Origin: Macrostomum lignano
Lineage: Eukaryota
Assembly (NCBI GenBank): GCA_002269645.1
Contig: NIVC01000948.1
Coordinates: forward strand, 62,001-126,000
Direction: 5' to 3'
Length of the DNA: 64,000 bases
Shown: positions 185 through 57,000 of the stretch, in pieces
Layout: each line of letters begins with the position of its first letter
Position numbering within the stretch: position 1 is the first letter of the stretch
The notes under the pieces: generated by a model
The model's input: only the letters and a program-made list of their open reading frames with translations
Told to the model about the DNA's origin: nothing
Databases searched by the model: none
Made by a program: the position numbers and the translations under genes

Positions 185-18682
<18,498 letters not shown>

Positions 18683-18696
18683 CTGGGAAGCGATGA

Positions 18697-18830
18697 AGTG
18701 ATTCTCATGAGGTGCAGGGCGATTCTCATGAGGTGATGTGAGATTCTCCTCAAGTGATGTGAGATTCTCATGAGGTGATATGAGACGCTCGTGAGTTCAT
18801 GTGTGATTCTCATGGTGAAGGAGCAATTCA
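18697..18830. repeat. Degenerate ~21-bp repeat (GATTCTCATGAGGTGATGTGA) just upstream of the ferlin ATG exon
   Basis: 5-6 degenerate units. Confidence 0.65.
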
Positions 18831-19829
18831 CGTGAAATGATACAGGTAGTAATAACCACAGACTAATTTAGAATTTAAAAAATCAAAAACACATCTTTCT
18901 GCAGAGCAATATTTTAAGAATCAAGAGTCCCTCAGTCAAGCGCCTTTTTGATTTCTTTTTTGAAGTAACTTTTTGTTTCACGCTTTTGAATTTCGACTGT
19001 GGGCGTTAAACTCCTGCTTTGCGCTGCACAGCTACATCTAGGAGCTACTGATTCCTTAGTTTTGAATGTCCTTCACCTTCTCTCTAATTGCTCTTCTGTC
19101 TCTTCCCTTTCGCTTGTGCACTATAGTATTCTCTCTGTGATCTTTAGCCTCTCTGCCTCTCCCTCTTCCTCGCTCTCCCTCTCCCCATCTCTCTCTGTCT
19201 CTCTCACTCATCTCTTACTCCTCTCACTCCCTCTCACTCCCTCTCACTCATCTCTCACTCCCTCCCGATCGACAGCCGCAAATATACAAAAACTATAGTA
19301 ATCTTAAGCATGTAATGGTGGACTCAGCACGCCTGTGTAGCATGAGACAGACCAGCCTACGAGTCAAGGTCTCAATCCAACACACCTGCATCCCCTCAAT
19401 TCTGGTGCAGGAATGGCAGGAGAACTCTCCAAGTTGACTCACAAGCCGACCCAGGGGTTCACGTCCCGCATGTGCTCAAGGCAGCTCTAGGGCTGCTGGA
19501 CTGACTGGGCTTCGGCGGTGCAACCCATCCGTGGCTTTGGCTTCTGTCTTTGTGCCGCTTTGGGTACGGGCTTCACCCGGAAGTGAACCTGTGAAGTGAA
19601 TCAGGTACCTCTGGCCACGGCTCTAAGGAACAGGTATCACCCTCTGACCTTAACAGGGTATGCGGCCAGTCCGCATGCTCCGGGGACAGCCTTTTGTCCC
19701 TTCAAGGGCCCAGCGTAGTACCGAGCTGATAGCCCTTTGGCTCTTAGCCGGTGAGTTTCTCGGTTGCTAGCGGTCGGGCCGGTAAAGGCCTAAGCCACCC
19801 CGGTCGCCATCTTTTGGCTGGCTGTTGGC

Positions 19830-21054
19830 TGTTACGGCCCAGCAGCTTCTCACCTCCAGTCCCCAATCGACTTTCAGCGACTCATTGAGTATTCATTTAC
19901 CTCCGACGCGTCCGAGGCCAACCGAGATTGGTACCGCGGCCCAGCCGGACATTCGCAACACCGGAACCAGTGACTCTCGTCAGCCCCTGCCGCCACTCAG
20001 AACACTGCCGAAGTGGCTGGACAAAACGTCGGCGGACCTCAGACCTCTACGGCGAAAGGACGGCGGACAACTGGAAACCCCGTGAAATCCACTGCTTCAC
20101 TGACGAGTCCCAAATCAACTCCGCCTCTGGCTACGGCTACTGCATCGTGTCTGGAGGGAGAACCGTGGTGACCTTCAGCACACCGGCACCTGCTCCACCG
20201 TCTTCTAGAACGAAGTTCTCGCCATCAGCTCCTGCGCCATGGAGCTGTATAATCAGCGCGTCTGGGGGAAGGAGACTATCCTCCATTCGGACAGTCAAGC
20301 GGCGATCCGCGCCCTTGAGCGCACCACCACCTGCTCGCGTACAGTTCTCGACTGCCTCGGGCAGCTCAACCGCTTAGGCGCTTCTAACAAGGTGTGCTTA
20401 AGGTGGATCCCCGGGCATTCGGGCCACCCCAGCAACGAGCTGGCCAATCGCCTGGCCAAGGCTGGCTCGACCGGTTTTTTTACTGATCCCCTGCCCGTGG
20501 CCCCCAACCCCACCGCCGTTGTCACCACTCGAACCAACCAGTGGGTGGCTTCAAAGGGAGAGGTGGGCTAACGCCCCGACTGCCGGCAATCCCGCGACGC
20601 TGTCCCCTGTCCTTCCTCTGCTTGGACTCAACCGCAGGGACATCAGGGCTGTGACCATCGCCCTCTCAGGTCACGGCTGTTTTGCCAGGCATCGTCACCT
20701 CCAAGGAAAAATCCGTAGTTAGGAATGCTCTTCTGCCTCTCCGGTGTCGAGAATCCAGAGCACTTCATCTGTGAATGCCCCGCCTTTACTCAGGACAGGC
20801 TCACATACCTCGGCCCAAACCCGGACCTATCCGACGTTTTCAGGCCCGAGAGTCTTTGCCAGCACGTCCGCTACCTAAGGGCTACCGGGCAAGCGACCAT
20901 CCACTTCTTGGACTCTCCCGGAGGGGGACCGCGCTGCGGACACCGCAGCACCGGCTGCCCGTGGTCGCCAGGGGTTAGTGAAATTGGCGGCAACGCCTCC
21001 ACGCTGCATACGGATGCACGGAGCCCCCTGAAACTAAGTCAAGTCAAGTAAGTC
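19830..21054 (+). mobile_element. Degenerate 3' part of an RNase H-containing non-LTR retrotransposon (R1/LOA/I-group-like)
   Basis: Frameshifted RNase H motifs HCFTDES, ILHSDSQAAIRAL, LRWIPGHSGHPSNELANRLAK, then LSGHGCFARHRH and a Cys/His knuckle [13 protein letters not shown]. Ends in an (AAGTC)n-like tail at 21035-21054. Confidence 0.8.
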
Positions 21055-24000
21055 ATTGTAATCCTAAAGTCACTTACATGAATTAATTGCTGTCAGTTGT
21101 CTACAGGTATTAAAAACCTGATTGAGAATCAAAGTTGGCGGCAAGTGACCGGCAAGTCAGAAATGCACTGACGGCACTGGTCTGGTCAACAGTTGTTTCA
21201 CCAAAAAAATTTAGCGCCTAATAAAAATAAAAACAACTCATTTTCTCTCACTGGTCTGCTTTTTCTGAAAAAAATAGAAATGGCGACATAATTTCTGCTC
21301 TTATCTATTTTGTCAGAGAAATCTTCTCCAATGACAGTTGGAGGAATGGCTGAGCGTGACATTCCAGCCAGGCTGGTAGATTACAGTCAGCTCTTGCATT
21401 GGTTGAGCTGATTTCGAATAGCATGCACATTAATGCAAGACCAATGCACCCCGAAGTTATGAAGCGTCGAGTCTTTTTACCAGATTAAAGAAAGACTTCT
21501 CGAATTAATGGCTGAGTGTACTGGGCTATCTTGTCTTGCCATTGGATCAGTAAAATATGCATTTAGTCATCGACAATGGCGAACTTGACGGGCCGTTTGA
21601 ACTCCTGTCTAGCAATTGAAATGATTTGTGTGGAATGGAATTTATTATGGTCGAGTTTAGCTGGATGTTGCGGTAGATGGGATCATCACAGTTATATTTG
21701 ACTAAACACCCGTTTAAGTATAGACATGCGACCTGGATGCATGACCACCAGTAAGCCAATGGGTGATGCAATTAATGACAAAGGATGAAGTACATTTATT
21801 ACTTGATACTTTAGCGCGGTCTACCTAAACTATAGGTATATACTGAGGGTTTGTTTTTTACTTTTTTCATTGGAAATCAATTGTTTTTTCGAATTAATAT
21901 TATGTTTACAGATAGCTATAACTAAAACTTTTGGTATACAGACATAAGAGAGAAGAATCCGGTATAAGTACTTGCACCCATTCTCCCACAGCGAAATTCT
22001 AGGGCAGAGGCAAAGTCAAAGAACGAGGGGATCGCGAATTTACACAGTTCAATTTTTTAAAATCAAGTATCTGTTTTTTACTTGATTTCATCTGTTTAAT
22101 CTAGCATTAAAATGTGGAGCATAAATATTATTACTATAATTTAAATACAATTGGTCTTTTTCACCTCTATGAAAGACAATAAAAAATGTATATTTGTTTT
22201 TTCCTCAGCGAAAATTCAACTACTGTTCAGGTGTGCACGTGCAAATAAATCTGCGTAAATTTACAAAGTAAAGCAACTTAATTAGAGTAAAAATACATGT
22301 GAATATTGGACAAGTTGAGCTATTTTGCATTAAAAGCACTATGACTATGAGTAAGGATTTTGTTGTATAAACCCTTACTTCTTGGACATTTGAATATCAT
22401 TCGTTTGCGTAGAAAACATTGATTACGAATCATAACATCCCACCCTATGCTGATATGGGAATAGGAAACACTTATATAAATTGAAATACTCAATCACATT
22501 ATTCATTTTTTATTACATAGCATTGTTCAACCTCGAGGGCTTTTGGTTCAAATCAAATAAATACTAGGCCTAGCTCGAACTCGTGATGCATCCTATTCAA
22601 ATTCGTGCCAAAATGCAGCATTTTAAAATAGCATTTAAAGTATCTGCAAAATCACAATCTTTTATAAAGCGTCTGTTAACCTCTTAAAATAGGCTTTTAC
22701 TCATGCTAAAGGTATTTTCATAGATTTTAATGTTGTTTAAAATTTGTAGTGTCGAGCGTATTTAAGTTGCATTTATTTATGGCCTTAATATTTTTTAAGG
22801 TTAAGGTTTTAACTCTCTACTAGGCTCTTCTTAATCTTGATTTTCGTTGTTCTTGTTAACATGTTGAATGATTGATAACAAAAATTTTGGGCCAAAGCTG
22901 GGTGGGTTTATGAACACGCATTCAGTAATCAGCTTCCTCTCTGACATTTTATAAACTATTTCTTTAACATTTGCTGGGTCTGGGTGGCACATGATAGGTG
23001 GCCTTACTTATGCCTTTCTTATTCATTATTGTTGTTTTGTCTATCATAGGCCTATATAGACTGTCGATAAAAATTCAATCTTTTTAGGCCTTGGTGTTGA
23101 CCTACATTTGATACTGATACTGATACATTGTGAAATATGACAGATATATATATTTGATTTGATCTAGATGCAAGCCAATTATGGCCCAAGCACTGCACTA
23201 GTAGCCTAATAAAATAAGCTATGCCTATCTTTGACTCTGTTGCCAAACTAGGTTAAAATTTTATAACATAGGCCTATAGTTAAAAATTGAGCTAAAAGTT
23301 TATATGCCTAATATCTACAATTCTAGCTCGTATATATATCAAGTTGAAGGCAAATATATATATAATGGTACACAAAATTCCCTTTTAAAAAGTCTTCTTG
23401 AGTCTCTTAAAAGCTATTAAGGGATATTTATACTATAATATAAATGTAATAAATGAGACCAGAATACATGGTAGGCCTAGTACATTGCTTTTTAGACTAT
23501 TCATTTAAGCATCATACAAATTTGTATAAAAATTCATTTGAATAATAATATAAATGAGCTTTAAAGGCAAGCTTCAATAGAAATTGTTTGAAAATGATTT
23601 ACAATTAATGGTCATTGCTCTCAAAGGCAAAGCCAATAAATAGACAGCGAGAAGTTGCTTGCTTTTGCTTGTCAATGACTTTGCTAATGTTATAATTGTT
23701 TATATAAGTTAACTATAAAGGACACCTTTTTATAACAGATAGAGTTACTAACAAAGTATTTCTTATAGTGGCATCAAAATATTACTCACATGTAAGGCTA
23801 CATCTAGCAGAGCTTGGCTCATTGCCATAGTTTTTTGTTAATAAATGGAATAAATAAAAGCTTTCTATTATGGACTTTGAGCAAAACAAAGGGAAAAAGA
23901 TTTTGAGTTTTTTATACATTGGTATATTATGTTGAAACTATTATAAAGGTATTGCAATTTTAGCAAGTGAACATATGGCTTATTAGTGCCTTTGCAATAG

Positions 24001-24511
24001 AGAGTAAAATCTAAAAGTGAGCATGCTTACTTTCTTGCATGTTCATAGACTTGTGTTTGTGAGTCTGCATAAAATGAGTAGTAAATAGCAGATCATCAAG
24101 TATAGCAATAAAGTTGATGCCTAAATATATCATCATACCACTCAACCACAGACTAGGTTTTTTGCTGACACTGATATGAAATTATATCCAAGGTCCATTT
24201 TCAAGATGCAATTCGGAAATTTAAGATATTATATAGCATCCCTATTGCATAAAAAACCTAGCAACCTAAGGTTTTTTTTCTAGTGACTAGTGCTTGGGTG
24301 CAAAATTATACTATCTTGCCTTCAACTATAAGATATAGCTAGTTTTTAGAACAACCATTACTTGTTAGAAGCACTTGAAGATAGGTTATTAAGGTGATAT
24401 TTAACTTTGTTGTTGGTGTATGAGAAAATATTGGTCCTCATGATTAAATATGTAAATATAAATATAAATTTTTGAAATTGATAGCCAGGTATTAATTATC
24501 TTATTTATTGC

Positions 24512-24613
24512 ACTACCTAGTGGTTAGTGTCATACTCAGGACTCAAAAGGTTTGATTCCAAATCCCAACTGGAACAATTTGTGTCCTTGAGCAAGACACC
24601 TAACTCTGCATTG
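24512..24613 (+). mobile_element. Truncated copy of the same SINE, just upstream of Dbf4
   Basis: CCTAGTGGTTAG..GGTTTGATTCC..TGTGTCCTTGAGCAAGACACCTAACTCTGCATTG matches the 5' half of copies 1 and 2. Confidence 0.7.
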
Positions 24614-24667
24614 GTATAATCAATTAAATTATGAATATTAAAAAGCTAAAATGCTGACTGATTGCAG

Positions 24668-27077
24668 TTGCAAAGTGGCGCAGAGAAGCTGCAGTTGCAG
24701 CCAACGCCGCCATTGCCTTCCCCTTCGCCATTGGAGCTGTCTGGCAAGCGAGTGTTCTTCTTTTATGAGCCTGCAGGGACTCGGCGCGATCGGCAGTGCG
24801 AAGCTGGCGTGCAGCTTTGCGGCGGCATTGTGGAACCCTTCTTTTCCAAACAGGTTGGTGTTGTTCCAGATTTATGGTATGAGGAATTGCTGACTGTTTG
24901 AGCATCATGAGATGGGTGCTGACTGTTTGAGCATCATGGGGTGAGTGCTGACTGTTTGAGCATCATGAGGTGAGTGCTGACTGTTTGAGCATCATGAGGT
25001 GAGTGCTGACTGTTTGAGCATCATGAGATGGGTGCTGACTGTTTGAGCATCATGGGGTGAGTGCTGACTGTTTGAGCATCATGAGGTGAGTGCTGACTGT
25101 TTGAGCATCATGAGGTGAGTGCTGACTGTTTGAGCATCATGAGGTGAGTGCTGACTGTTTGAGCATCATGAGGTGAATGCTGACTGTTTGAGCATCATGA
25201 GGTGAATGCTGACTGTTTGAGCATCATGAGGTGAGTGCTGACTGTTTGAGCATCATGAGGTGAGTGCTGACTGTTTGAGCATCATGAGGTGAATGCTGAC
25301 TGTTTGAGCATCATGAGATGGGTGCTGACTGTTTGAGCATCATGAGGTGAATGCTGACTGTTTGAGCATCATGAGGTGAGTGCTGACTGTTTGAGCATCA
25401 TGAGGTGAGTGCTGACTGAGCATGACGCCATGATGAACCTAACACAAACCTGTCCCCCAGGTGGACTGTCTCATCACTAATGCGGACCTGTCCAACAAGC
25501 CTGTCGCAGAGGTGTTAGGATTCGGTGCCGTTGCTGCCTCCACCCCGCCGCCCAGGGTCCATGGCGCCTCATCACGCGGCCTCCTGCTGCAGCGCCTGGC
25601 CGCGGCTGCCAAAGGCGTTGCTGACCCAGCAGCTGCCATCGTTCATCAAGCTTCCACAGCCGCTGCCGCCGGAGACGACACCCTGGCTAAGGCGCGGTCT
25701 CTCGGGCTAAGAATCTTCAAGCTGACCGATGTCCGGGACTGCCTCCGGGCCAGCGGCCATCTGCCGCCAGAGCCCGCCGATGCGGCCGGTGCAGCAACCG
25801 GGGCAGCAGCAGCAGCCTCCTCAGCGTCGGTCACACCGCAGTTCTATTCTGGCGACCGAGTGCTCAGCCTGCCAGCCCTGGTGATTGCGGATCCCAGGCG
25901 TCAGCGAGGTCCAATTGTCAGCGAGAAACTCGACGTTGTCGACTGTTTCAACGCCGCTGCCGGCTCCGTCAAGGAGAACCGCCGGCCGCCGAAAATTGTC
26001 TCGCCCTGTCGGGGTCGGCAGCGACGTCGGAATCCGGAGCCGCCGCCGCCGACCCAGCCGCCGCCTCAGAAGCGACGATGCGAGAACTGCCACGGCGCTT
26101 ATTTAGACTTCAACAGTCACGTGACTGGGCCGCGGCATCGCCAATTCGTTGCCACGCCGGCTAATTTTGTGGAGATTGACAAAGTGCTGTCGGACTTGAC
26201 TCCGCTAGCTGAAGCTCTCGCCGTTGCGGTGCCCGCGCCAGCAGCGCCCGCAGTCGCTGATGCCGCCGACACCGCAGCTGCCGAGGCCGCTGTCGCTGTG
26301 CCCGACGAAGCAACCTCGGCGAAACTGGTCGCTGACTTGAACTGGCTGGCCGCCAGCCCTCGAGCCGCCGGCAAGCAGCGGTCGAACTCGGCTGCGGCAG
26401 TCGCCAGCCAATGCCGGGGGCGCAGTCATTCGCAGGACATTCGATTCCTAACCGGCCGTCGGGTTAGCGCCGGCGCCGCTACGGCCGCGGCTCCGCTGTC
26501 TTCTCGCCGCCAGCTGATTCCCAAGCAGCACCGGAAATCGGCTCCGCAGGTGTTGCTGCCGACGGTGGTGCAGAAGAAGACCGGCGGTGATGCCGCTGTT
26601 GCTATGGTTGACAATGCCTCAGCAGCTGATCCTCAACAGCCGCGGGCTAAGCGACCCAGGCTGGATGCTGAGGCAGGTCAACAGCTGAAGTCCTCTGGAG
26701 CGGCAGTTAGCGAAGCCACCGAGCACATGGCCATGTCCAACTGCGACTTGCCGGCATTCAAATATCCCAGCACCGCCAGTTTTGGCCGGCTTAGTCGGCA
26801 AAGCGACGAAGCGGCTGCGCCTGTTGGACAACGCGTCGAGGCTGCCGCGTCGAGTAATTTGGACAATGACGTCACCGTGCCGATGTCGGATCCTGCCTGG
26901 TCGGATCCGACCGATCCATTGCAGCAGCAGCAGCTATCCGCATCTCGGTCTGCATCGTCGCAGGCTGGCCGCTCCAATGCTGCGACCGCCGCTTCGGGTG
27001 TCAATTCGTCAAACGATAATTGCGGCTTGTCGTCTCCTTCGGCTTGTCATCGGCGGCATAAGCGACAATTGAGTTAA
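24668..27077 (+). CDS. DBF4: Dbf4/ASK-like regulatory subunit of Cdc7 kinase
   Basis: Exons 24668-24853 (LSGKRVFFFY..CGGIVEPFFSKQ, BRCT-like motif N; CAG|GTTGGT) and 25461-27077 (cccag|VDCLIT; motif M LSLPALVIADPRRQRGP; motif C zinc finger CENCHGAYLDFNSHVTGPRHRQF). About 600 aa with a long Ala-rich tail. No in-frame ATG, so the 5' end is open. Confidence 0.85.
24884..25418. repeat. 29-bp minisatellite GTGAGTGCTGACTGTTTGAGCATCATGAG
   Basis: About 18 units filling the Dbf4 intron. Confidence 0.96.
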
Positions 27078-27104: not shown

Positions 27105-27570
27105 CAGTGTGATTTCTCGTTGCTATGCGGTTGCTGTGGTACCGGATAGTACAATTTCCCGTTGCTACGCGGTTGTTAGGGTATTAGATAGCAGAACTCC
27201 CCGTTGCTATGCGGTCGTTAGGGTATTAGATAGCAGAACTCCCCGTTGCTATGCGGTCGTTAGGGTATTAGATAGCAGAACTCCCCGTTGCTATGCGGTC
27301 GTTAGGGTATTAGATAGCAGAACTCCCCGTTGCTATGCGGTCGTTAGGGTATTAGATAGCAGAACTCCCCGTTGCTATGATGTTGTTAGGGTATTGGATA
27401 GCAGAACTCCCCGTTTCTATGCGGTCGTTAGGGTATTAGATAGCAGAACTCCCCGTTGCTATGCGGTTGTTAGGGTATTGGATAGCAGAATTCCCCGTTG
27501 CTATGCGGTCGTTAGGGTATTGGATAGCAGAATTCCCCGTTGCTATGCGGTTGTCGGGGTATCAGAATAA
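27105..27570. repeat. 42-bp minisatellite immediately after the Dbf4 stop codon
   Basis: About 10 units of GTTGCTATGCGGTCGTTAGGGTATTAGATAGCAGAACTCCCC. Confidence 0.94.
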
Positions 27571-27949: not shown

Positions 27950-28665
27950 ATACATGAACTTCGATAGGGTAGTGCAGATCCCTGAGGAACTTTGAGAGGG
28001 TAGTGCAGATCCCTGAGCAACTTTGAGAGGGTAGTGCAGATTCCTGAGCAACTTTGAGAGGGTAGTGCAGATCCCTGAGCAACTTTGAGAGGGTAGCTCA
28101 GATCCCTGAGCAACTTTGAGAGGGTAGCTCAGATCCCTGAGCAACTTTGAGAGGGTAGTGCAGATCCCTGAGCAACTTTGAGAGGGTAGCTCAGATCCCT
28201 GAGCAACTTTGAGAAGGTAGTGCAGATCCCTGAGCAACTTTGAGAGGGTAGTGCAGATCCCTGAGCAACTTTGAGAGGGTAGTGCAGATCCCTGAGCAAC
28301 TTTGAGAGGGTAGCTCAGATCCCTGAGCAACTTTGAGAGGGTAGTGCAGATCCCTGAGCAACTTTGAGAGGGTAGCTCAGATCCCTGAACAACTTTGAGA
28401 GGGTAGCTCAGATCCCTGAGCAACTTTGAGAGGGTAGCTCAGATCCCTGAGCAACTTTGAGAGGGTAGCTCAGATCCCTGAGCAACTTTGAGAGGGTAGT
28501 GCAGATCCCTGAGCAACTTTGAGAGGGTAGCTCAGATCCCTGAGCAACTTTGAGAGGGTAGCTCAGATCCCTGAGCAACTTTGAGAGGGTAGCTCAGATC
28601 CCTGAGCAACTTTGAGAGGGTAGTGCAGATTCCTGAGCAACTTTGAGAGGGTAGCTCAGATCCTT
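27950..28665. repeat. 29-bp minisatellite GAGGGTAGTGCAGATCCCTGAGCAACTTT
   Basis: About 24 units between Dbf4 and ARIH1. Confidence 0.96.
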
Positions 28666-28832
28666 GAAGATTTTACTTCCCTGTAACTCAATACTAAATT
28701 TGACCCTTTGAGCTTCTTATCGTCTGATTAATCTATTTGCATGCTCTCAGCCGTGTGCTTGGCCAATAAGAATAGGACAGAATTACCATTAGATTAATCT
28801 ATATATAAATAACAATAGAATAGACGGTAAAT

Positions 28833-31476
28833 ATGCTATCGTCTATGGCCAGACCTGGCGGCAGCGGTCGTCGCAGGCGGAACAGCCAGGGGGAGCCATC
28901 GGCGGGAGATCAACAGCAGCCGCAGCAGCAGCGGACGGTTCTCAGCGCCAAGCAGAGCAGGCTGTCCCCGGTGGTGCAGGCTAGCAACTGCAACAGCAAA
29001 GCCATGGTGCTGCAGAAGACGCCTGTCCAGCAGCAGCAGCATCCGGCGGCTCAGCTGCATCACCTGGGCCATCAGATTCGAACTGATACTGGGCGAAACG
29101 ATTACTACACAGTCCTAACCCCGGAGGACCTCTGGGACTCCATGCAGCGAGTCATTGACAGTGCCGCTGAGGTGCTGCACTTGCCCAGACAGTACATCCG
29201 GCTTCTGCTGAGGGCCTTTCGCTGGGACAAGGACCGACTGCTGGACAGGTGAGTGGGCCGCTGCAACTCTCAGGGTCCTTTAGAGGGCCGCTGCAACTCT
29301 CAGGGTCCTTTGGAGGGCCGCTGCAACTCTCAGGGTCCTGTGGGGGCCGCTGCAACTCTCAGGGTCCTTTGGAGGGCCGCTGCAATTCTCAGGATCCTTT
29401 GGAGGGCCGCTGCAACTCTCAGGGTCCTTTGGAGGGCCGCTGCAATTCTTAGGATCCTTTAGAGGGCCGCTGCAACTCTCAGGGTCCTTTGGAGGGCCGC
29501 TGCGACTCTCGGGGTCCTTTGGAAGGCCGCTGCGACTCTCGGGGTCCTTTGGAGGGCCGCTGCAATTCTTAGGATCCTTTGGAGGGCCGCTGCAACTCTC
29601 AAGGTCCTTTGGAGGGCCGCTGCATCTCCCAATTAGAGTCTCAGGTTATCCAACCGATCTGTGCTTTGCCAACCCGCAGCTATTATGAAGCAGACCCAGA
29701 CGAGTTCCTAGCCAAGTACCACATACCGCAGCAGCAGCAGCAGCAGCAACAAGAAAAGCAGCCGCACAGCTCAGCAGAAATGTGCGAAATCTGCCTGGCC
29801 GAATCTCCGAGTTTAAGCGGAGCCGGCTGCGGGCACAGGTTCTGCTCGGACTGCTGGACCGCCTACCTGGAAGAGAAGATGGCATCCAATGGCCAGTTCG
29901 ATGCGTTCCAATGCCCGGCGCACAGGTGCCCAGCCCAGGCGGACGACTTCTTGGTGGATCAGCACCTGATTAATGGCCGGCTGCGCTCCCAGTACCGCCG
30001 ATCCATTCTCCAGACCTACGTGTCAAACACTCGCCGTCTGGCCCCGTGCCCCGGCCTCGACTGCGACATGGCCGTCAGCTTGACCGACGACACTGGCGGC
30101 CTGGTCTGCCGCGTCACCTGCCGCTGCGGCAAGTCGTTCTGTTTTGCCTGCGGCAACGACTGGCACGAGCCGATTGGCTGCGAGATGCTGCGCAGATGGT
30201 TACAGAAGAATGAAGGAGAGTCCATGAATACTCAGTGGTTTCTGGTGCACACTAAGGTAAGTGCGACCGGTGCACAGGTGTGGGCTTCTACTCTTGTTCT
30301 GAGGATAATTCCCTTTTTTGTATGCAATAAACTGTGAACTGTCAATGGGATAATTCTCCCCGTTTAGTATGGGATTAACTGTCAATAGGATAATTCTCCC
30401 CCTTTTAGTATGGGATAATTCTCCCCCTTTTAGTATGTGATATAAACTGTCAATGGGATAATTCTCCCCCTTTTAGTGTGGGATAAACTGTTAATGGGAC
30501 AATTCTCCCCCTTTTGTATGGAATGAACTACCAATGGGATAATTCTCCCCCTTTTGTATGGAATGAACTACCAATGGCATAATTCTCCCCTTTTCTATTG
30601 GATAAACTGTCAATGGGATAATTCTCCCCTATAAAAGAAGTGACTTGTTCCATTGACAGCTTATCCCCTGTAAAAGAGGAGAATTATCCCATTGACCGTT
30701 TATCCCATACAAAAGGGGATACATGTAAACTGTAATTAGGATAATTATATGGGATGAGCTATATAATTAATCTCCTGTTTACCGGCCGCCACCAGCCCTG
30801 CCCCAAGTGCCACGCCACCATCGAGAAGGACGGCGGCTGCAACCACATGGTGTGCCGCAACGTGAGCTGTCGCTACGAGTTCTGCTGGGTGTGCATGGGC
30901 GAGTGGCAGCCCCATGGCAACCAGTGGTACAATTGCAACAGATTTGACAAGGACCGAGCTGACAAGCTCAAGCAGGCGCAGGCGGTCTCTAGGGACTACC
31001 TGGTTCGCTACCTGCACTATTACGATTTGTACATGAATCATCGCCGCTCCATGGAGCTGGAGTCGCGCCTCATTGGCATCATCAGCGCCAAGATGACGGA
31101 GATTCAGCAGGCTGGCCTGTCCTGGGTGGAGTGCCGGTTCCTACGCGACGCGGTGGACGCGCTGTGCAAATGCCGCCGGGTGCTCATGTACACCTACGTG
31201 TTCGCCTATTACCTGAAGCCCAGCAATCAGCAGAGAATATTTGAGGACAATCAACGCAATCTGCAGCTGACTACCGAGGCACTCAGCGAGGTGCTGGAAC
31301 GCGAGCTGGACCTCGCTAATCTTCAGCGCCTGAAGCAGAATGTGCAGGATCGCTACCGTTATTGCACTAGCCGGGCGGCTGCACTCCTGCAGCACGTCTA
31401 CGAGGGCTATCAGGGCGACTGGTGGACCTTCGATATGAATGGCGGCCAGCCTTCGCCTGGAAATCCGAGCGGTTGA
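28833..31476 (+). CDS. ARIH1: Ariadne-1-type RBR E3 ubiquitin ligase
   Basis: Exons 28833-29248, 29680-30256, 30796-31476 (557 aa, frame-consistent). UBA-like segment, RING1 ([13 protein letters not shown]), IBR ([27 protein letters not shown]), RING2 with catalytic GGCNHM, Ariadne domain ([20 protein letters not shown]). The RING2 sequence is closer to ARIH1 than to ARIH2. Confidence 0.93.
29254..29630. repeat. 30-bp minisatellite GGAGGGCCGCTGCAACTCTCAGGGTCCTTT
   Basis: About 12 units filling ARIH1 intron 1. Confidence 0.95.
30337..30720. mobile_element. Foldback-like element with asymmetric tandem-repeat arms in ARIH1 intron 2
   Basis: Tandem CTGTCAATGGGATAATTCTCCCCCTTTTGTATG units (30337-30630), then inverted copies (30655-30720). 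Confidence 0.6.
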
Positions 31477-49017: not shown

Positions 49018-49394
49018 ACATCCAATAAAAAGCCTGTCTATACCCCTGAAGAGCCCTAAACCTTAAAGAATTCTTAATAAATTCATTCACCCTTGAGGCG
49101 CTCTCTGTCTTGTCTGCTTTCTCTCGAACGGCGGGAATTTCAACTAACTTTTCTATGCTCTTTCGGACTCGTCTTTAACTAAGCGCTTTTCAACGCCACA
49201 CTTTGCCTTTCCCCATATGCGTACTTCAGCCTATTGCAAACCAGAGCCAATTGTCTGACTGGAGTGGACAGGCAGACAGACCCATAGGCAACTGAAAGCG
49301 CACAGATTCCACAGCATGCTCTTTAAAAGCGAGCCCTCAATGAGAGAAGGCGAGAGCATATGAAGAGACAGCAGCGTTAGAAGATTCATACCAA

Positions 49395-52300
49395 ATGCCG
49401 ATAAGCTGCGAGCAAAGGGTACGTTTCAAAATACCCGACGGCTTGGTCTGCCAGGTGATCAAATTCGTGTGGCTATGCATCCTGTTAGCGTCATCGAATG
49501 CCGCTGGAGACGCGCCAGCAACCGCCGTCAAACTGGTGGACGGATTCAGCAGCAACGAGGGCACCGTTATGCTCCTGTTCAACTCTACTTGGGGCCCGGT
49601 CTGCGACGACGGATGGAATCTGGATGCCGCATCAGTGGCCTGCCGGCAGGCTGGCTTTGGACCGGCCATGACCTACACTACTGGGAACCGCTACCGTACC
49701 CGGCTCAGGGGTGAGTGGCTGGTCAAGGAGGCTCTGGCGGGTGACGATTGTGAAAAAATGTATGGTATTTATGTGAAACCGAGAGAGTGCTTATTATGGA
49801 CACTACTGGGTTGATGGGGTGCTTGCTCGCTGCATGGGCCCTAGACTAATAGGGTGGTTCGCTGCATGGACCCTGGATTGATAGGGGTGGGTGCTGCATG
49901 GACCCTGGATTGATAGGGGTCGGTGCTGCATGGACCCTGGATTGATAGGGGTGGGTGCTGCATGGACCCTGGATTGATAGGGGTGGGTGCTGGATGGACC
50001 CTGGATTGATAGGGGTGGATGCTGGATGGACCCTGGATTGATAGGGGTGTGTACTGCATGTACCCTGGATTGATAAGGGTGGGTGCTGCATGGACCCTAG
50101 GTTGATAGGGGTGGGTGCTGCATGTACCCTGGATTGATAGGGGTGTGTGCTGCATGTACCCTGGATTGATAAGGGTGGGTGCTGCATGGACCCTAGGTTG
50201 ATAGGGGTGGGTGCTGCATGTACCCTGGATTGATAGGGTGTGTGCTATCGATTTCTAGGAGTCAAACTACTATAGCATTAAAAAACGGTCCAACGCAGCC
50301 GATGTGATGCACCTGGACGACGTCAGGTGCACTGGTACCGAGACTGCCCTCACTGACTGCCGCAGCCGGCCCCTTGGGCAGCACGATTGTCGGGCAAATT
50401 TTGAGGCAGCCGGTGCTCGCTGCTCGGTGCTGGGACCGTCGAGGACCCCGGCGCCTGATTGGAATCCCTTGCGACTTGAAGGGGCCAGCCGGGAGTGGCT
50501 TGCCAACATGTCTCGGGTGAGCATCAAACCGGGTGTCTTAAAAAATAACCTAAAGTGCTCAAGTTGAAAGAGTTCTCGAATTGAAAAAGAGCTCAGCGCT
50601 GAGATGAATAGTCCTTAGAAATGTTGACAAGCCCCTCCCCCCGCAGTCAACTTTCCGCCTTCAAGGAGTGAGCTACGGTCACGGCAGCAGCCTTGCAGTC
50701 ATCGCTGAAGTGTCCAACGGTCCAGCAGGTGCCGTTTGCGTCGACGATGTCACTCTCCGAGAGGCCAACGTCATCTGCCGACAGCTGGGCGCCGGTCAAT
50801 ACGGCAGGTTTCTGCACTCGGTGGGTTGGAATGTCAAACATTTGCGCTCTGTCTTAGCCATAAAAAGTGATCAACTTCAAAGTTCCGCTTTTTCAACAGT
50901 TCCAAATTTCTGATCTCACGCTCGACGGTCTGACGAACTCGAGCCGACCGGTTCTGTTGCTGGGCAACTGCTTGGGAAATGAGACTCTGACACGACAGTG
51001 CGTTGTCTATGGAAGCAACCGGGGAGTGCCGTGCAAATCTTCGGCGCTAGCTTTGGGTGTCACCTGTACATCAGGTAACTGTTAGATGAGGTGAGGTGAG
51101 GTGAGGTGAGGTAAATTGAGGTGAGTTGAGGAAGGATGAGATGTGGTGAGGTGAGATGACGTGAGTTGAGGTGAGGTCGAATGAGACTTAATATCACTTA
51201 AAATCATTCGCAGGCCAATAGTTCTGATAGGCTGAATCTTGATTCTCATCCTTTAGACCTACCGGATCTCGTGCCAGACACCCAGGCGCTTCAGACTTCT
51301 GTCTACCTGGCCAAGGTTCCCTTGTACTACATGGCCTGCGCTCTGGAGGAAAATTGCGCATCGCCGATGGCCTTCGAGTTGCAGAAAAATGACCCGCGTT
51401 AGTACAATATGTTCTTTTAAAGATATGTTTAAAGTTTGCAAACGGATGAATCATACGGGGGTTGGAGAATCGAGGGTCCAGTACGGCAGCGAGTGAGGTG
51501 GCTGGGGAATCGAGGGTCCAGTATGACAGGGAGTGAGGTGGCTGGGGAATCGAGGGTCCAGTATGACAGGGAGTGAGGTGGCTGGGGAATCGAGGGTCCA
51601 GTATGACAGGGAGTGAGGTGGCTGGGGAATCGAGGGTCCAGTATTACAGGGAGTGAGGTGGCTGGGGAATCGAGGGTCCAGTATGACAGGGAGTGAGGTG
51701 GCTGGGGAATCGAGGGTCCAGTATGACAGGGAGTGAGGTGGCTGGAGAATCAAAGGTCCAATAGGGCAGGGAGTGAGGTGGCTGGAGAATCAAAGGTCCA
51801 ATAGGGCAGGGAGTGAGGTGGCTGGAGAATTAAAGGTCCAATAGGGCAGGGGTGGCTGGAGAATTAATGGTCCAGTAGGGCAGGGAGCGAGGTTACTGGA
51901 TATTGGAGCGTTTTATTTGGATCTGAATTTTGGAGTGGGAGCTAAATTTACCATAATTATAAGAGCAAGCTCGTATTTTAACCCTTCAGACTGGCCATTT
52001 GCCAACCGCAATCTGCTGAAGTTCTCCAGCATTGTGGCGAACGAGGGCACGCGGGATTTTCTTCCCCTGCGGGACACTGGCACCTGGGAGTGGCACCTTT
52101 GCCACATGCACTACCACAGTATGGAATACTTTGCTCACTACGAGGTCTATACAAGGTAATCACGCTAGATATTATTGCGAGTGTGATTTATGTAGAATTT
52201 GTGTAGAATTATGTAGAAAGACTATGGATAAGGACTGTGGATAAAGGCTATAGATAGACAATGGATAAAGACTATGGATAAAGACTATGTAAAAATACTA

Positions 52301-53250: not shown

Positions 53251-54060
53251 CAAATAAATTGGTGTATTTTCATACTAGTTTTCGTGTTCTTACGAACCTA
53301 TTCATTGAGAACTTTCTATTTTAAACCAACTGAAACGATTGCCCCCCCTTAGGCTGGAATGCCCCGTGGCCAATCACGGTCGAGGGGATGAGTGCTCGGG
53401 TGGCGCCTAAATAGGAAGGATGCTTGATCGAGACCGAGAGAAAGTGTCTCGCAGGCATTAAAAAATCCAGACGGTTCAGAGCAGTACTGCTTGACAAATG
53501 GATCTCGTGACTGGGGTGAGTTGCAAAATTAAAACAAAGGAGATCGATTTGCATGGGGGATTTTGGTAGCTGCTTTTGCTGTTGATTGAAGGCTCATCGA
53601 TCCGTACTCATACGAGCCGTAGATACTGCAACACCAGCACCGTGTTTATTTTTAGCTTTGAGAAATCCTTCCTTTCGTTCTTTGTCTACGTTATAATTGG
53701 AGTCGAACCGTACCCTTACTTTGTGTCTGCTCAGTTGCAGACAGGAAGCTTCCTCAAGCCAGTTAGTCATTTTCCGCTCTTGTGTAATAAATATTAAATT
53801 AGCTTCAACATTCAAACGAGTGATGAAGCCGGCCACTCCGTCCCTCTTCCCACTGTTCTCATCTCTCCCTGTCATGTCGTTAAGTCGAACTTTAATAATG
53901 TTTACAGCTAATGCCTGTGACTGGGTCTGGGCCCAACTGCACAGAATTCGTAATTTGATTGATCTTTGACCCGCTGACCTACTACTCCCGCTGAACCGGC
54001 ATCTACCGATGAGCTTTGCTACTCTGCCCGCCTCTGTTGAACCCAAAATATGAATTGCAG

Positions 54061-57000
54061 AACTTTTTCTACGCGAACGACACGAGCAGCCTGCCAGCCT
54101 ATCCGACGCTCGACCACCCGGGAGCCGTCAAGTCCGCCATCCTGATGCTCATCTTCACATTCTCCCTGGCCAGCAACCTGCGCGCACTCCGCCAGGCCGG
54201 CTCGCCGGCCCCGGGGACGCCTGACACCAGCCTCCGCCTGCTGCTGCTGAACCTCATCGTGGCCGACCTGATGGTCACAGGCTTCTGTCAGTTTGGTAGC
54301 GCGGCCTGGATGCTCAGCGTGGAGTTCCACGGCGGCAACGCGCTGTGCCGGCTGTTCAAGTTCAGCCAGGCGGCTTCGCTCAACTGCAGCACCTACATCA
54401 CGCTGGTAATTGCTGTCAGCCGGGCCGGCGGGCTCCTCCTGCCATGGCGCTGGCAGCGACGCCGACGCCGACGCCGTCTAGGAGGTCTCCTCGTCGCGGC
54501 GTGGACCGCCGGATTGGCTGTCAGCGTGCCTCAGGTAGGATATCGTCCAATTTGTTTGGCATTATCGACTGTCTAGTAACGTCACGTACTTTGAAATACG
54601 TCATCGATCGTGTTGGATGACGTCATAGGTCGTCGGTCGTCTCGGATTAAGGCATGGCGCAAAATTTTATGTGTGACTAATAGCTTTTTTGGCATCATCA
54701 AACGTTAAATGACGTCATTGACCACTTATTTTTGACATCTCTGAAAATTATGATACTTCATTGACTTTGCATACCAACTACGAATTTTACTATTCAATCG
54801 TTCAAGGTGCTTGGAGACAGGCGTAATTTGTCATTTGACATGAGACTTATGCTAAAAAACCTAAACCCTGTAGCTGTTCCTATTTGGCGTTGCTCGGGGT
54901 CCCTGGTCGCGGAGCTTCCACCAGTGCGTCTCCATTGAGTTGCGCCCGATGCCGCCACCCATAGCGGACCACGCGGACCAAATCGTGCTGGGCTGCATGC
55001 TGTTCAACCTGACCAGCCAGTTCCTACTGCCGGCCACCTGCATGTCCGTCTGCTACGCGCTCATTCTCATCCGCATCGTCAAGCACTCCAGGCAGCTGGG
55101 TAAGTCTCCATCACCCATGTACTGAGCCAAAGAGTTCTTGAAAGGGAATGCAGAGCATTATACCCTTAAATTCCATAGATTCTGACTGTAGACGAGTCTG
55201 ACTGCAGTTCTCAGTTCACGCACTGTGCTCACAAATTAGTCAGTGCTTATTTCACGAATTTTAACATTATCATAGCTCACGTGTCGTCGAACAAAGTGAA
55301 ATTGATGCAACAGGTGGCGCAACAGAGGTCGGTACGATCTTGAAGGCGGCGAGCAACACGGAGCAGGCCGTTTTGTTTTTCTGAAATCAATCACATGACT
55401 AGATAGATAGGGACAACTAATTTTTAGTATAGTGGATGTCACAATCGATGACGTCTTTCAAAGTTATGACGCAGTTGATAGTGCCAAACAAACTATACGA
55501 TGTCTTACCTGAGGCACGCTGACAGCAAATCCGGCGGTTTACGCCGCGACGTGGAGAAACTTGCCTATCTGCTTTGTGAGAAACTGAGAAACTGCAGTCA
55601 GCCTCATCATGTTCGAGGCCTGACTGGAAAGTGATAACAAATGTCATCAATATTCAACTGCTTGAAAGCTTGGGTGCCTGGAGGAAAAGAAACGGAGGCT
55701 CAATTGTTTGCAAAAAAAAGTAATTTCCTCTCGACTGAGACAACCCTTCGAAGTGAAATAGAAAAAAATCTGAAAATAAACATATCAGCAGCAGAAGCCC
55801 CCCCCCCCCTCCCAGCAATGAATTCCCTTTTAATCCCGGACGTTCAGTGCACTCCAATTTATTTTCAATCTGCCGTTGTAGCAGAGGTTGTAAGTCGAGA
55901 ACTCGCGGAAAGTCAGCCAAAATAAGTTTTTTTCCGAGTGGATTCCTTCTTTCTTCTGTGTGCCATTTCTCTGAAAGGAACGGATTATGCAAGTCCGAGC
56001 AGAGGTTCTGGCTATCGTATGAGTTACAATTGTGAGGTTTGCGTGTGAGGTTGGACCTTCGTGCTTGTGTTTGTTATTTTATTCCTTTATTTGGTCATGT
56101 GCTCTCTTAACGTGTGGCTCTGTATATTTTAACCTCTGCCCGTCGGGGGTGAGTCGTTTTTATTCTAATCGTTATTCTAAATAATTACTGCACTTAATGA
56201 GAAAGAGATTGTTGCGCTGGCTGAAAAAGATAATTTTAATTTGGGGTTGCTTGATATCTGGGGGGGGGGGGGGGCTATCTGGAGGATATTTGCTATCGTG
56301 GTATGCTTGCTCTCGGGGGGGGGGGGTGCTTGCTACCTGATGGGGGCAATGCTTACTATTAAGTGTTTGCTATCGGGGAGGGGAGAGGAGGTACTTGCTA
56401 TCTAGAGTTGCTTGCTATATGGGGGTTGCTTGCTGTCTTTGCGAAGGCTTTATTTTTTTGTCCCTCTGTTACTTTTTGAAAAAAGGGATTCATGGTCTGT
56501 GACAAGTTTACTCGAATAAACTGAAAAAGGAATTGGTTCTTAAGAAAATGTGCTTTTTAATGAATTTGGATGAATATTTTTTGCTCCTTGCTTATTGCAA
56601 GGGGGGCACTAGATTGCTAGTCGTTATTCTATTGCTGAAAATTCATAAATTTAATGCCATATCTATCATCAATGCCAAATATACTTCGTTTACTTTGTCC
56701 TTCATTCTCCGGCTCCACAGTGGTGGCAGCGAGAACCCAATGCTAGTGCACTAATGGCCCAGAACGCACTTTTTAGTGGCACGGACGGCACTGACGTGAG
56801 AATATGAGTATTGAAGTATCTTCGAAGAATGATGCGAAATGAGACGACGAGACTTCAGCGTCGAAATTGAAGTTTCTGCTTACTGGAGAGGCCCAGCTGG
56901 TCGTCTGAGACCTGGACGAGACAAGAAGAGCTTCAAGAGCATCAAAGAGGACCTCACAAAGTTTTATGGAGGCGAATCCGACAGCTTCAAGTCTATAAGT

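What the first reader, a model, noticed from the sequence alone, without database searches (positions are those of the whole stretch)
24651..24701. Dbf4 has no start codon of its own; its ORF opens at a phase-0 acceptor (candidate spliced-leader AUG)
Seen: the BRCT-like frame is closed by TGA at 24659-61 and has no ATG. It opens at tgCTGACtgattgcAG|TTG CAA (24668), a branch-like CTGAC plus acceptor. Alternative in-frame acceptors lie at 24695 and 24701, and the upstream sequence is AT-rich. Established: flatworm spliced leaders end in AUG, which can act as initiator Met (shown in Schistosoma). Inference: SL trans-splicing supplies the Met in frame.
Basis: partly seen in the sequence, partly recalled or inferred. 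Interest (0 to 1): 0.7.

Follow-up and report, generated by a model that had tools for sequence, protein, structure and literature searches.

The report
Flatworm Dbf4 gene lacking a start codon
A cell-cycle gene (Dbf4) of the flatworm Macrostomum lignano has no start codon of its own and most likely borrows the AUG at the end of the spliced leader that this species adds to about a third of its mRNAs. The mechanism has been known in flatworms since 2006, so this is an ordinary new example, and no read-level evidence for it could be obtained here.

Summary
The window is Macrostomum lignano, identical in all five stretches compared to GenBank scaffold NIVC01000948.1.

**Gene structure**
- The gene is a two-exon Dbf4 homologue: 24668-24853 and 25461-27077.
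- It has a BRCT-like motif N from codon 24 and a significant zf-DBF hit at codons 269-308.
- Its frame is closed by TGA at 24659-61, and the first in-frame ATG is codon 444.

**Support for the spliced-leader (SL) reading**
- GenBank labels all three genomic copies "partial".
- The copies differ by 13 synonymous and 4 non-synonymous changes, so the gene is functional.
- M. lignano has one SL ending in ATG, and its published SL-acceptor motif is [T/C]TNCAG.
- TTGCAG at 24662-67 matches that motif and would place the SL AUG in frame, giving a 601-aa product.

**Caveats**
- No SL-bearing read could be examined here.
- The public CDS starts at 24677, 9 nt after the proposed acceptor. That fits an AAAG|T acceptor at 24675|24676, which would put the SL AUG out of frame.
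- An upstream ATG exon (for example 21346-21375) is not excluded.
- The "alternative in-frame acceptors" at 24695 and 24701 may simply be Leu-Gln codons.

The parts
22000..24667 (+). AT-rich stretch upstream of exon 1 (GC 0.31); presumed outron, or intron if an upstream exon exists
24654..24658 (+). CTGAC branch-point-like motif. Its A at 24657 lies 10 nt before the G of the first AG and 18 nt before the G of the second.
   Evidence: TGCTGACTGATTGCAG is conserved in L001, L002 and L003
24659..24661 (+). in-frame TGA that closes the Dbf4 frame upstream
24662..24667 (+). TTGCAG, a match to the M. lignano SL-acceptor motif [T/C]TNCAG. Proposed trans-splice acceptor; phase 0 with the ORF.
   Evidence: motif from PMC8629364
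24668..24853 (+). Exon 1 (62 codons, no ATG). Encodes a short unconserved N-terminus and BRCT-like motif N from codon 24 (24737).
24674..24675 (+). AG of a competing acceptor (CAAAG|T). SL-ATG joined at 24676 is out of frame (31-aa ORF). The GenBank CDS begins at 24677. Position 24676 is the only exon 1 difference between paralogues (T/C, synonymous).
24689..24700 (+). CTGCAG and TTGCAG: acceptor-like motifs in frame (24695, 24701) that also simply encode Leu-Gln-Leu-Gln
24854..25460 (+). Intron 1 (GT..AG), mostly a 29-nt tandem repeat at 24888-25418 (18.3 copies)
25461..27077 (+). Exon 2 through stop TAA at 27075-77. Contains zf-DBF (motif C) at 26079-26198 and the first in-frame ATG at 26604-06 (codon 444).
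21346..21375 (+). Candidate upstream ATG exon (MAERDIPARL). Phase 0, ggaATGg context, weak donor GTAGAT. Not excluded.
   Evidence: lies in a stretch 100% identical in L001
24023..24058 (+). Only upstream ATG segment in 18700-24650 that ends in phase 0 on a consensus GT[AG]AG donor. Rejected: in L001 the ATG is ATA and there is a 1-nt deletion.
21328..21760 (.). Cluster of five CCAAT/ATTGG boxes, flanked by two TTTAGCGC at 21210 and 21810. Possible promoter of the transcription unit (inference only).

Best explanation
The gene is the Macrostomum lignano Dbf4 homologue (GenBank BOX15_Mlig017237g2), the regulatory subunit of Cdc7 kinase. Its genomic reading frame has no AUG.

Proposed mechanism:
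1. The pre-mRNA starts somewhere in the AT-rich region upstream.
2. That outron is removed by spliced-leader trans-splicing at TTGCAG (24662-67).
3. The 35-nt SL ends in ...UUGCAUG, so its last three bases become the codon immediately before TTG at 24668, in phase 0.
4. Ribosomes initiate at this SL-derived AUG and make a 601-aa protein, M-LQSGAEKLQLQ..., with motif N starting 24 residues in.

Shown: the missing ATG, the closing stop, the consensus acceptor in phase 0, the species and its SL, the functional state of the gene, and the 5'-partial public models.

Inferred: that the SL is actually joined at 24668, and that its AUG is the one used.
For: - Species and gene: 99% identity to a Macrostomum lignano protein; L002 is identical to the window in all five stretches compared.
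- No ATG for 443 codons, and TGA three codons (9 nt) upstream of codon 1 (24668), with only TTG CAG between.
- zf-DBF, E 4.3e-12.
- Motif N is conserved from codon 24, and homologues carry only 11-43 residues before it.
- Purifying selection, 13 synonymous against 4 non-synonymous changes plus two in-frame indels versus paralogue L001.
- All three GenBank copies are 'partial' with no Met, and they derive from RNA-seq-based models cut at SL sites (method).
- The SL sequence ends in ATG followed by GTAAG, the SL-acceptor motif is [T/C]TNCAG, and 30% of genes are trans-spliced with enrichment among conserved and neoblast genes.
- SL-ATG joined at 24668 gives a 601-aa ORF.
- GC steps from 0.31 to 0.58 at this point.
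- The upstream neighbour is on the other strand. This is therefore outron removal, not operon resolution.
- The only consensus-donor upstream ATG exon is broken in L001.
- Use of the SL AUG as initiator is established in other flatworms (Cheng et al. 2006 as cited; 143 of 187 SL clusters in Echinococcus). It is presumed in Macrostomum.
Against: - No SL-exon junction sequence was available, and the protein collections held no transcript-derived copy.
- The GenBank CDS begins at 24677 in all three copies, 9 nt after the proposed acceptor. A model starting at 24668 should have given LQSGAEK..., not GAEK.... The simplest reading is a model 5' end at 24676, after AAAG, which is out of frame.
- If CTGAC is the branch point, the first AG is only 10 nt away and might be skipped in favour of the second.
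- The other branch-like motif, CTAAA at 24646-50, is not conserved in L001.
- The pyrimidine tract is poor.
- The SL AUG has U at -3, a weak initiation context.
- A phase-0 upstream exon at 21346-21375 cannot be excluded.
Confidence: 0.55

Rival explanations
1. The SL is added mainly at the next AG (CAAAG|T, 24675|24676), as the public gene model implies. The SL AUG is then out of frame and opens a 31-codon ORF ending at TGA 24764-66. Dbf4 protein would come only from a minority of mRNAs spliced at an in-frame AG (24668, 24686, 24689, 24695 or 24701), or from near-cognate initiation at CUG 24689 or UUG 24695.
For: - The GenBank CDS starts at 24677 in L001, L002 and L003. This equals the first full codon of a transcript starting at 24676.
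- The AG at 24674-75 lies 18 nt after the conserved CTGAC branch-like A, whereas the first AG is only 10 nt away.
Against: - CAAAG is a poor acceptor and does not match [T/C]TNCAG, while TTGCAG 8 nt upstream does.
- An essential gene under purifying selection would be left without an efficient start.
- The 9-nt offset may be an annotation artefact. The only paralogue difference in exon 1 sits exactly at 24676, where alignments of transcripts from the other copy could be clipped.
Confidence: 0.17
2. A conventional first exon with its own ATG lies upstream and is cis-spliced to the 24668 acceptor, for example ATG 21346 to donor GT 21376 in phase 0. The public pipeline cut it off because it truncates models at SL sites, or missed it.
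For: - 21346-21375 is in phase 0, has a ggaATGg context, and lies in a CCAAT-rich, fully conserved stretch.
- Flatworms often share acceptors between cis- and trans-splicing (PMC12582326).
- TBONE cuts transcriptional units at SL signals.
Against: - The donor GTAGAT does not match GT[G/A]AG.
- Only one consensus-donor phase-0 ATG segment exists in the 6 kb upstream, and it is disrupted in L001.
- RNA-seq-guided models of three copies show no such exon.
- The CCAAT boxes lie mostly downstream of this ATG, which fits a promoter better than an exon.
Confidence: 0.17
3. Non-AUG initiation on an mRNA that is not trans-spliced, at in-frame UUG 24662/24668/24695 or CUG 24689.
For: Several near-cognate codons lie in frame right after the stop.
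Against: - It is rare for this to be a gene's sole mode of initiation.
- An unspliced leader would carry ATG 24651 in another frame, open for about 90 codons.
- The 5'-partial model ends at the exon start rather than upstream.
Confidence: 0.04
4. Assembly indel error. One extra base anywhere in 24654-24700 would put ATG 24651 in frame, giving MLTDCSCKSGAEK...
For: One search shows the frame is restored by a single inserted base (modelled as an extra A in the AAA run at 24672-74). The assembly is long-read based.
Against: - Three separately assembled scaffolds, one 1-5% diverged, carry the same sequence.
- The run is only three As.
- A transcript starting upstream would not have been called 5'-partial.
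Confidence: 0.03
5. The locus is a non-functional copy (pseudogene) that has lost its start.
For: No ATG, and M. lignano carries many duplicated copies.
Against: - There are 13 synonymous against 4 non-synonymous differences.
- Both indels are in frame.
- The 600-codon ORF is intact in all three copies.
- No other copy with an ATG was found.
Confidence: 0.02

Closest known systems
Flatworm SL 3'-terminal AUG used as initiator methionine (Cheng, Cohen, Ndegwa and Davis 2006, Schistosoma; also reported for Echinococcus and Taenia; 'slORFs' in PMC9851317)
   Same: - The SL ends in AUG.
- The acceptor sits in phase 0 at the opening of an ORF that has no AUG of its own.
- The N-terminus matches orthologues only if the SL AUG is used.
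   Different: The species is a free-living macrostomorph, where this use is presumed (PMC10468722) but was not found documented gene by gene. Here the junction itself is not demonstrated, and a competing out-of-frame AG lies 8 nt downstream.
Ordinary SL trans-spliced genes of M. lignano (acceptor in the 5' UTR, own AUG downstream)
   Same: Consensus [T/C]TNCAG acceptor, an AT-rich outron, and a conserved cell-cycle gene, which is the class enriched for trans-splicing (PMC8629364).
   Different: There is no AUG of its own for 443 codons, so the SL cannot be a mere UTR replacement.
Dbf4/ASK/Drf1 family (Cdc7 regulatory subunit)
   Same: zf-DBF motif C is significant. BRCT-like motif N and the region between align with animal Dbf4-type proteins.
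   Different: - Very Ala/Pro-rich and Met-poor.
- Only about 24 residues precede motif N.
- Sequence identity to animal homologues is 24-28%.
- M. lignano has a second Dbf4-type protein (A0A1I8HXN8) that is 36% identical.

Membership tests
SL-AUG-initiated ORF (flatworm slORF) | Species has SL trans-splicing with an SL ending in AUG | tested here: met
   Species identified. SL sequence ...TTATTGCATG followed by GTAAG comes from PMC5173321 and PMC8629364. No SL RNA gene lies in the window itself.
SL-AUG-initiated ORF (flatworm slORF) | A trans-splice acceptor at the opening of the ORF, in phase 0 with it | tested here: inconclusive
   TTGCAG|24668 matches the published motif and is in phase 0. 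The public model's 5' end points to AAAG|24676, which is out of frame.
SL-AUG-initiated ORF (flatworm slORF) | SL-bearing transcripts joined at that acceptor | not testable with these tools
   No RNA-seq reads or transcript assemblies of M. lignano were reachable. Protein searches returned only genome-derived models.
SL-AUG-initiated ORF (flatworm slORF) | No alternative AUG able to give the conserved N-terminus | tested here: inconclusive
   There is none in exon 1 or before codon 444. One consensus-donor upstream exon was rejected. The weak-donor candidate 21346-21375 is not excluded.
SL-AUG-initiated ORF (flatworm slORF) | Translation actually starts at the SL AUG | not testable with these tools
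   Needs ribosome profiling, N-terminal proteomics or a reporter.
Dbf4 (Cdc7 activator) | Motif C: DBF4-type zinc finger | tested here: met
   Pfam PF07535, E 4.3e-12, 46.3 bits against a cut-off of 24.8, residues 269-308. Weak match to yeast DBF4 chains in the PDB.
Dbf4 (Cdc7 activator) | Motif N: BRCT-like domain near the N-terminus | tested here: met
   HMMER alignments span query residues 22-310 in several animal zf-DBF proteins. Those proteins show sub-threshold or threshold BRCT hits at the aligned place. Invariant residues are L24, K27, G52, G53, F58 and V63. The query itself has no Pfam BRCT hit.
Dbf4 (Cdc7 activator) | Binds and activates Cdc7 | not testable with these tools
   Biochemical.
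Downstream gene of an SL-resolved operon | Same-strand gene closely upstream (repeat-adjusted distance under 1 kb) | tested here: not met
   The upstream neighbour is a ferlin on the minus strand whose CDS starts at 18682. Only a retroelement RNase H remnant lies between. Dbf4 could at most be the first gene of a unit with the Ariadne gene downstream.

The most novel reading that the evidence does not exclude
Dbf4 translation is obligatorily coupled to trans-splicing, and the choice between two acceptors 8 nt apart acts as an on/off switch for Cdc7-Dbf4 activity in stem cells. TTGCAG|24668 is in frame and productive; CAAAG|24676 is out of frame and yields a 31-codon dead-end ORF. This would be a splice-site-level control of S-phase entry in a regenerating flatworm.
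Probability: 0.08. Interest if true: 0.6.

Novelty: new member of a known kind. Interest (0 to 1): 0.3.

Why it matters
**Annotation.** Three GenBank entries for this gene are labelled "partial", although the protein is probably complete once the SL AUG is counted. The same is likely to apply to many other M. lignano models. A pipeline that trims the whole SL, ATG included, will systematically produce start-less proteins.

**Biology.** If confirmed, an essential replication-initiation factor in a stem-cell model organism could only be made from trans-spliced mRNA. That would be a clean, testable case of trans-splicing being required for protein output, rather than for UTR trimming or operon resolution. 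The mechanism itself has been known since 2006, so the surprise for a specialist is small.

Tried and rejected
1. **Transcript-derived proteins carrying the SL peptide.** The SL read in frame has no stop (…SYCEDSIYCM). The search with SL peptide plus N-terminus found nothing, and did not even return the known GenBank protein. That negative result is therefore uninformative.
2. **Exact look-up of the second Dbf4-type paralogue's DNA.** I wanted to see whether it also opens at a phase-0 acceptor. It is not on record, and only UniRef entries without contigs exist.
3. **Look-up of the reconstructed spliced Ariadne protein,** to fetch more annotated neighbours and calibrate where 5'-partial models start.
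4. **Supplementary tables** of three M. lignano papers, searched for Mlig017237 or DBF4 and a trans-splicing flag. Nothing was held.
5. **Conservation between paralogous loci,** to find an upstream exon. The copies are too similar (94-100%) to discriminate.
6. **Upstream consensus-donor exon 24023-24058.** Rejected because its ATG and frame are lost in L001.
7. **SL RNA gene, other Rfam families and tRNAs** in the window. None found.
8. **PDB sequence search.** Only weak motif C matches.
9. **Branch-point reasoning.** CTAAA at -18 of the first AG is not conserved in L001, and cis introns here show no strict branch consensus. I judged it too weak to choose between the two AGs.

Full report
**What the window is.** The spliced translation of the flagged frame matches one protein cluster in the large protein collection: [quoted passage not shown], at 99% identity. 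A second member, BOX15_Mlig017237g2 (also "partial"), is identical to the window's product from residue 4 onward. Locus L002 (GenBank NIVC01000948.1, assembly GCA_002269645.1) is identical to the window in all five stretches compared, with window position = L002 position + 14676.

**Checking the observation.**
- TGA is at 24659-61, in the frame of TTG at 24668, with only TTG CAG between them.
- The frame runs 24668-24853, then a GT..AG intron, then 25461-27077, ending in TAA at 27075-77. The intron is filled by a 29-nt tandem repeat of 18.3 copies.
- The frame is 600 codons long, and the first in-frame ATG is codon 444 (26604-06).
- Pfam finds zf-DBF at residues 269-308 (E 4.3e-12).
- A full HMMER scan of 1.8 billion representatives finds animal zf-DBF proteins aligned over query residues about 22-310.
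- An alignment of N-termini shows the BRCT-like motif N starting at codon 24, with L24, K27, G52, G53, F58 and V63 invariant.

Any start codon must therefore lie upstream of 24737, and there is none between the stop and that point.
- GC is 0.31 upstream and 0.58 in exon 1.

One qualification applies. Four of the five YTNCAG motifs inside the CDS end on a codon boundary, because they encode Leu-Gln. Five of the seven AGs in the N-terminal stretch are in frame. The "alternative in-frame acceptors" are therefore what coding sequence would show anyway.

**Is the gene alive?** The paralogous locus L001 (NIVC01000723.1) differs from the window copy in the CDS by 13 synonymous and 4 non-synonymous substitutions and two in-frame indels. 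That is clear purifying selection, so the gene is translated and must acquire an AUG.

**Does the species have the required machinery?**
- M. lignano has a single spliced leader, CCGTAAAGACGGTCTCTTACTGCGAAGACTCAATTTATTGCATG (PMC5173321).
- The SL RNA gene has GTAAG directly after the ATG (PMC8629364).
- About 30-39% of genes are trans-spliced, with enrichment among conserved and neoblast genes.
- The top motif at SL acceptors is [T/C]TNCAG, positioned at the junction.
- TTGCAG|24668 fits that motif. Joining the SL there gives AUG-UUG-CAA…, a 601-aa ORF.
- Use of the SL AUG as initiator is established in parasitic flatworms. Cheng et al. 2006, as summarised in PMC9851317, found it in frame in 28% of trans-spliced S. 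mansoni mRNAs and required by more than 40 cDNAs. In Echinococcus, 143 of 187 SL clusters are full length only when the SL ATG is counted (PMC3510090).

**Context.**
- The upstream neighbour is a ferlin on the minus strand, whose CDS starts at 18682.
- Between the two genes lie a retroelement RNase H remnant at 20209-20568 and 2.7 kb of 31% GC sequence.
- Dbf4 is therefore not a downstream operon gene. If it is trans-spliced, an outron is removed.
- Downstream, on the same strand, is an Ariadne-type RBR E3 ligase (28833-31476) with its own ATG.

**What the public annotation adds, and the problem it raises.** The GenBank models come from RNA-seq-guided assembly, with transcript 5' ends cut at peaks of SL-trimmed reads and ORFs called by TransDecoder.
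- All three copies are 5'-partial. This argues against a well-expressed upstream ATG exon and for a transcript end at the start of exon 1.
- However, the CDS begins at GGC (24677), not at TTG (24668).
- A 5'-partial ORF starts at the first full codon of the transcript, so the model's 5' end is 24675-24677. A start at 24676 would follow AG at 24674-75.
- SL-AUG joined there is out of frame and gives a 31-codon ORF.
- Two further facts cut both ways. The conserved CTGAC lies 10 nt before the G of the first AG and 18 nt before the G of the second, which favours the second AG if CTGAC is the branch point. The only exon 1 difference among the paralogues is exactly at 24676 (T/C, synonymous in the Dbf4 frame), so the offset could be an alignment-clipping artefact.

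I could not resolve this. Function argues that at least some mRNAs use an in-frame AG.

**Upstream exon rival.**
- Scanning 18700-24650 for an ATG followed, in phase 0, by a consensus GT[AG]AG donor gives one hit (24023-24058). In L001 its ATG is ATA and a 1-nt deletion shifts the frame, so it is rejected.
Its donor is GTAGAT.
- That candidate sits in the only non-repeat cluster of CCAAT/ATTGG boxes in the window (five in 450 nt). This looks more like a promoter than an exon.
- Conservation between paralogues is too high to help, so the candidate remains open.

**Minor rivals.**
- Non-AUG initiation is possible but unlikely as a gene's sole mode of initiation.
- An assembly indel is a formal possibility, because one extra base would put ATG 24651 in frame. 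Three scaffolds agree, however.
- A pseudogene is contradicted by the substitution pattern.

**Verdict.** The most likely mechanism is SL trans-splicing at TTGCAG|24668, with the SL's terminal AUG as initiator (confidence about 0.55). The main alternatives are trans-splicing at the out-of-frame AG 8 nt downstream (0.17) and an unannotated cis-spliced ATG exon (0.17). In kind this is a known flatworm mechanism, so the case is a new, unproven member. Its practical value is mostly for annotation, since "partial" M. lignano proteins may be complete. It is also a neat reporter-testable example in a transgenic model.

No step had to be referred.

Noticed in passing
window 24888-25418 (intron 1) and 24652-24667: The 29-nt intron repeat unit TGCTGACTGTTTGAGCATCATGAGGTGAG carries a consensus donor (GTGAG) and a CTGAC branch-like motif in each of about 18 copies. 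The 16 nt just upstream of exon 1 (TGCTGACTGATTGCAG) resemble the start of this unit.
   Followed up: partly
window 27118-27566 and 27957-28667: Two long tandem arrays (42 nt x 10.7 copies, 31 nt x 22.9 copies) fill most of the 1.75 kb between the Dbf4 stop and the Ariadne ATG (28833). The repeat-adjusted distance is about 0.6 kb, under the 1-kb operon criterion of PMC8629364. Dbf4 and Ariadne could be one transcription unit.
   Followed up: no
window 18680-18690, minus strand: The ferlin CDS starts at an ATG immediately preceded by an acceptor-like cttcccAG. An SL added there would give AUG-AUG in frame.
   Followed up: no
window 28815-28835: Upstream of the Ariadne ATG, aatAG|ACGGTAAAT-ATG would also put an SL AUG in frame, 3 codons ahead. 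The neighbouring caatAG would not.
   Followed up: no
window 21210-21820: Five CCAAT/ATTGG boxes lie within 450 nt, the only such cluster outside tandem repeats. Two copies of TTTAGCGC (E2F-like) sit at 21210 and 21810. This is a possible cell-cycle promoter 3 kb upstream of exon 1.
   Followed up: partly
window 24668-26603: There are 443 consecutive codons without a single Met in a functional protein. Chance is about 1e-3 to 5e-5, and the protein is very Ala/Pro-rich. I did not test whether internal AUGs are selected against.
   Followed up: no
L001 versus window about 19750, 23485 and 24455-24578: The paralogous locus carries insertions of about 620, 300 and 815 bp relative to the window. 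The last lies only 90-200 bp upstream of the acceptor. Divergence drops from about 5% just upstream of 24668 to 0.5% in exon 1.
   Followed up: partly
P0003 / P0017 (UniRef A0A1I8HXN8, A0A1I8JFC0; M. lignano): A second Dbf4-type protein of M. lignano (36% identical) also begins without Met (GCLVEQFTLDSLRGKRVFF...), 11 residues before motif N. Its DNA could not be retrieved.
   Followed up: partly
window 20209-20568 (+): RNase H remnant of a retroelement (Pfam E 2.8e-6), in a GC-rich block between the ferlin and Dbf4 genes.
   Followed up: partly
window 49344-50564 and 54013-54573 (+): SRCR-domain exons and a rhodopsin-family GPCR exon. Much of the window is tandem repeats (for example 7.7-12.4 kb, 43-44.5 kb, 48.1-49.1 kb).
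   Followed up: no
(tool behaviour): A 100-aa query containing 83 residues identical to P0001 and P0002 returned no hit. Short queries can miss exact relatives in the word-indexed search, so negatives from it are weak.
   Followed up: no
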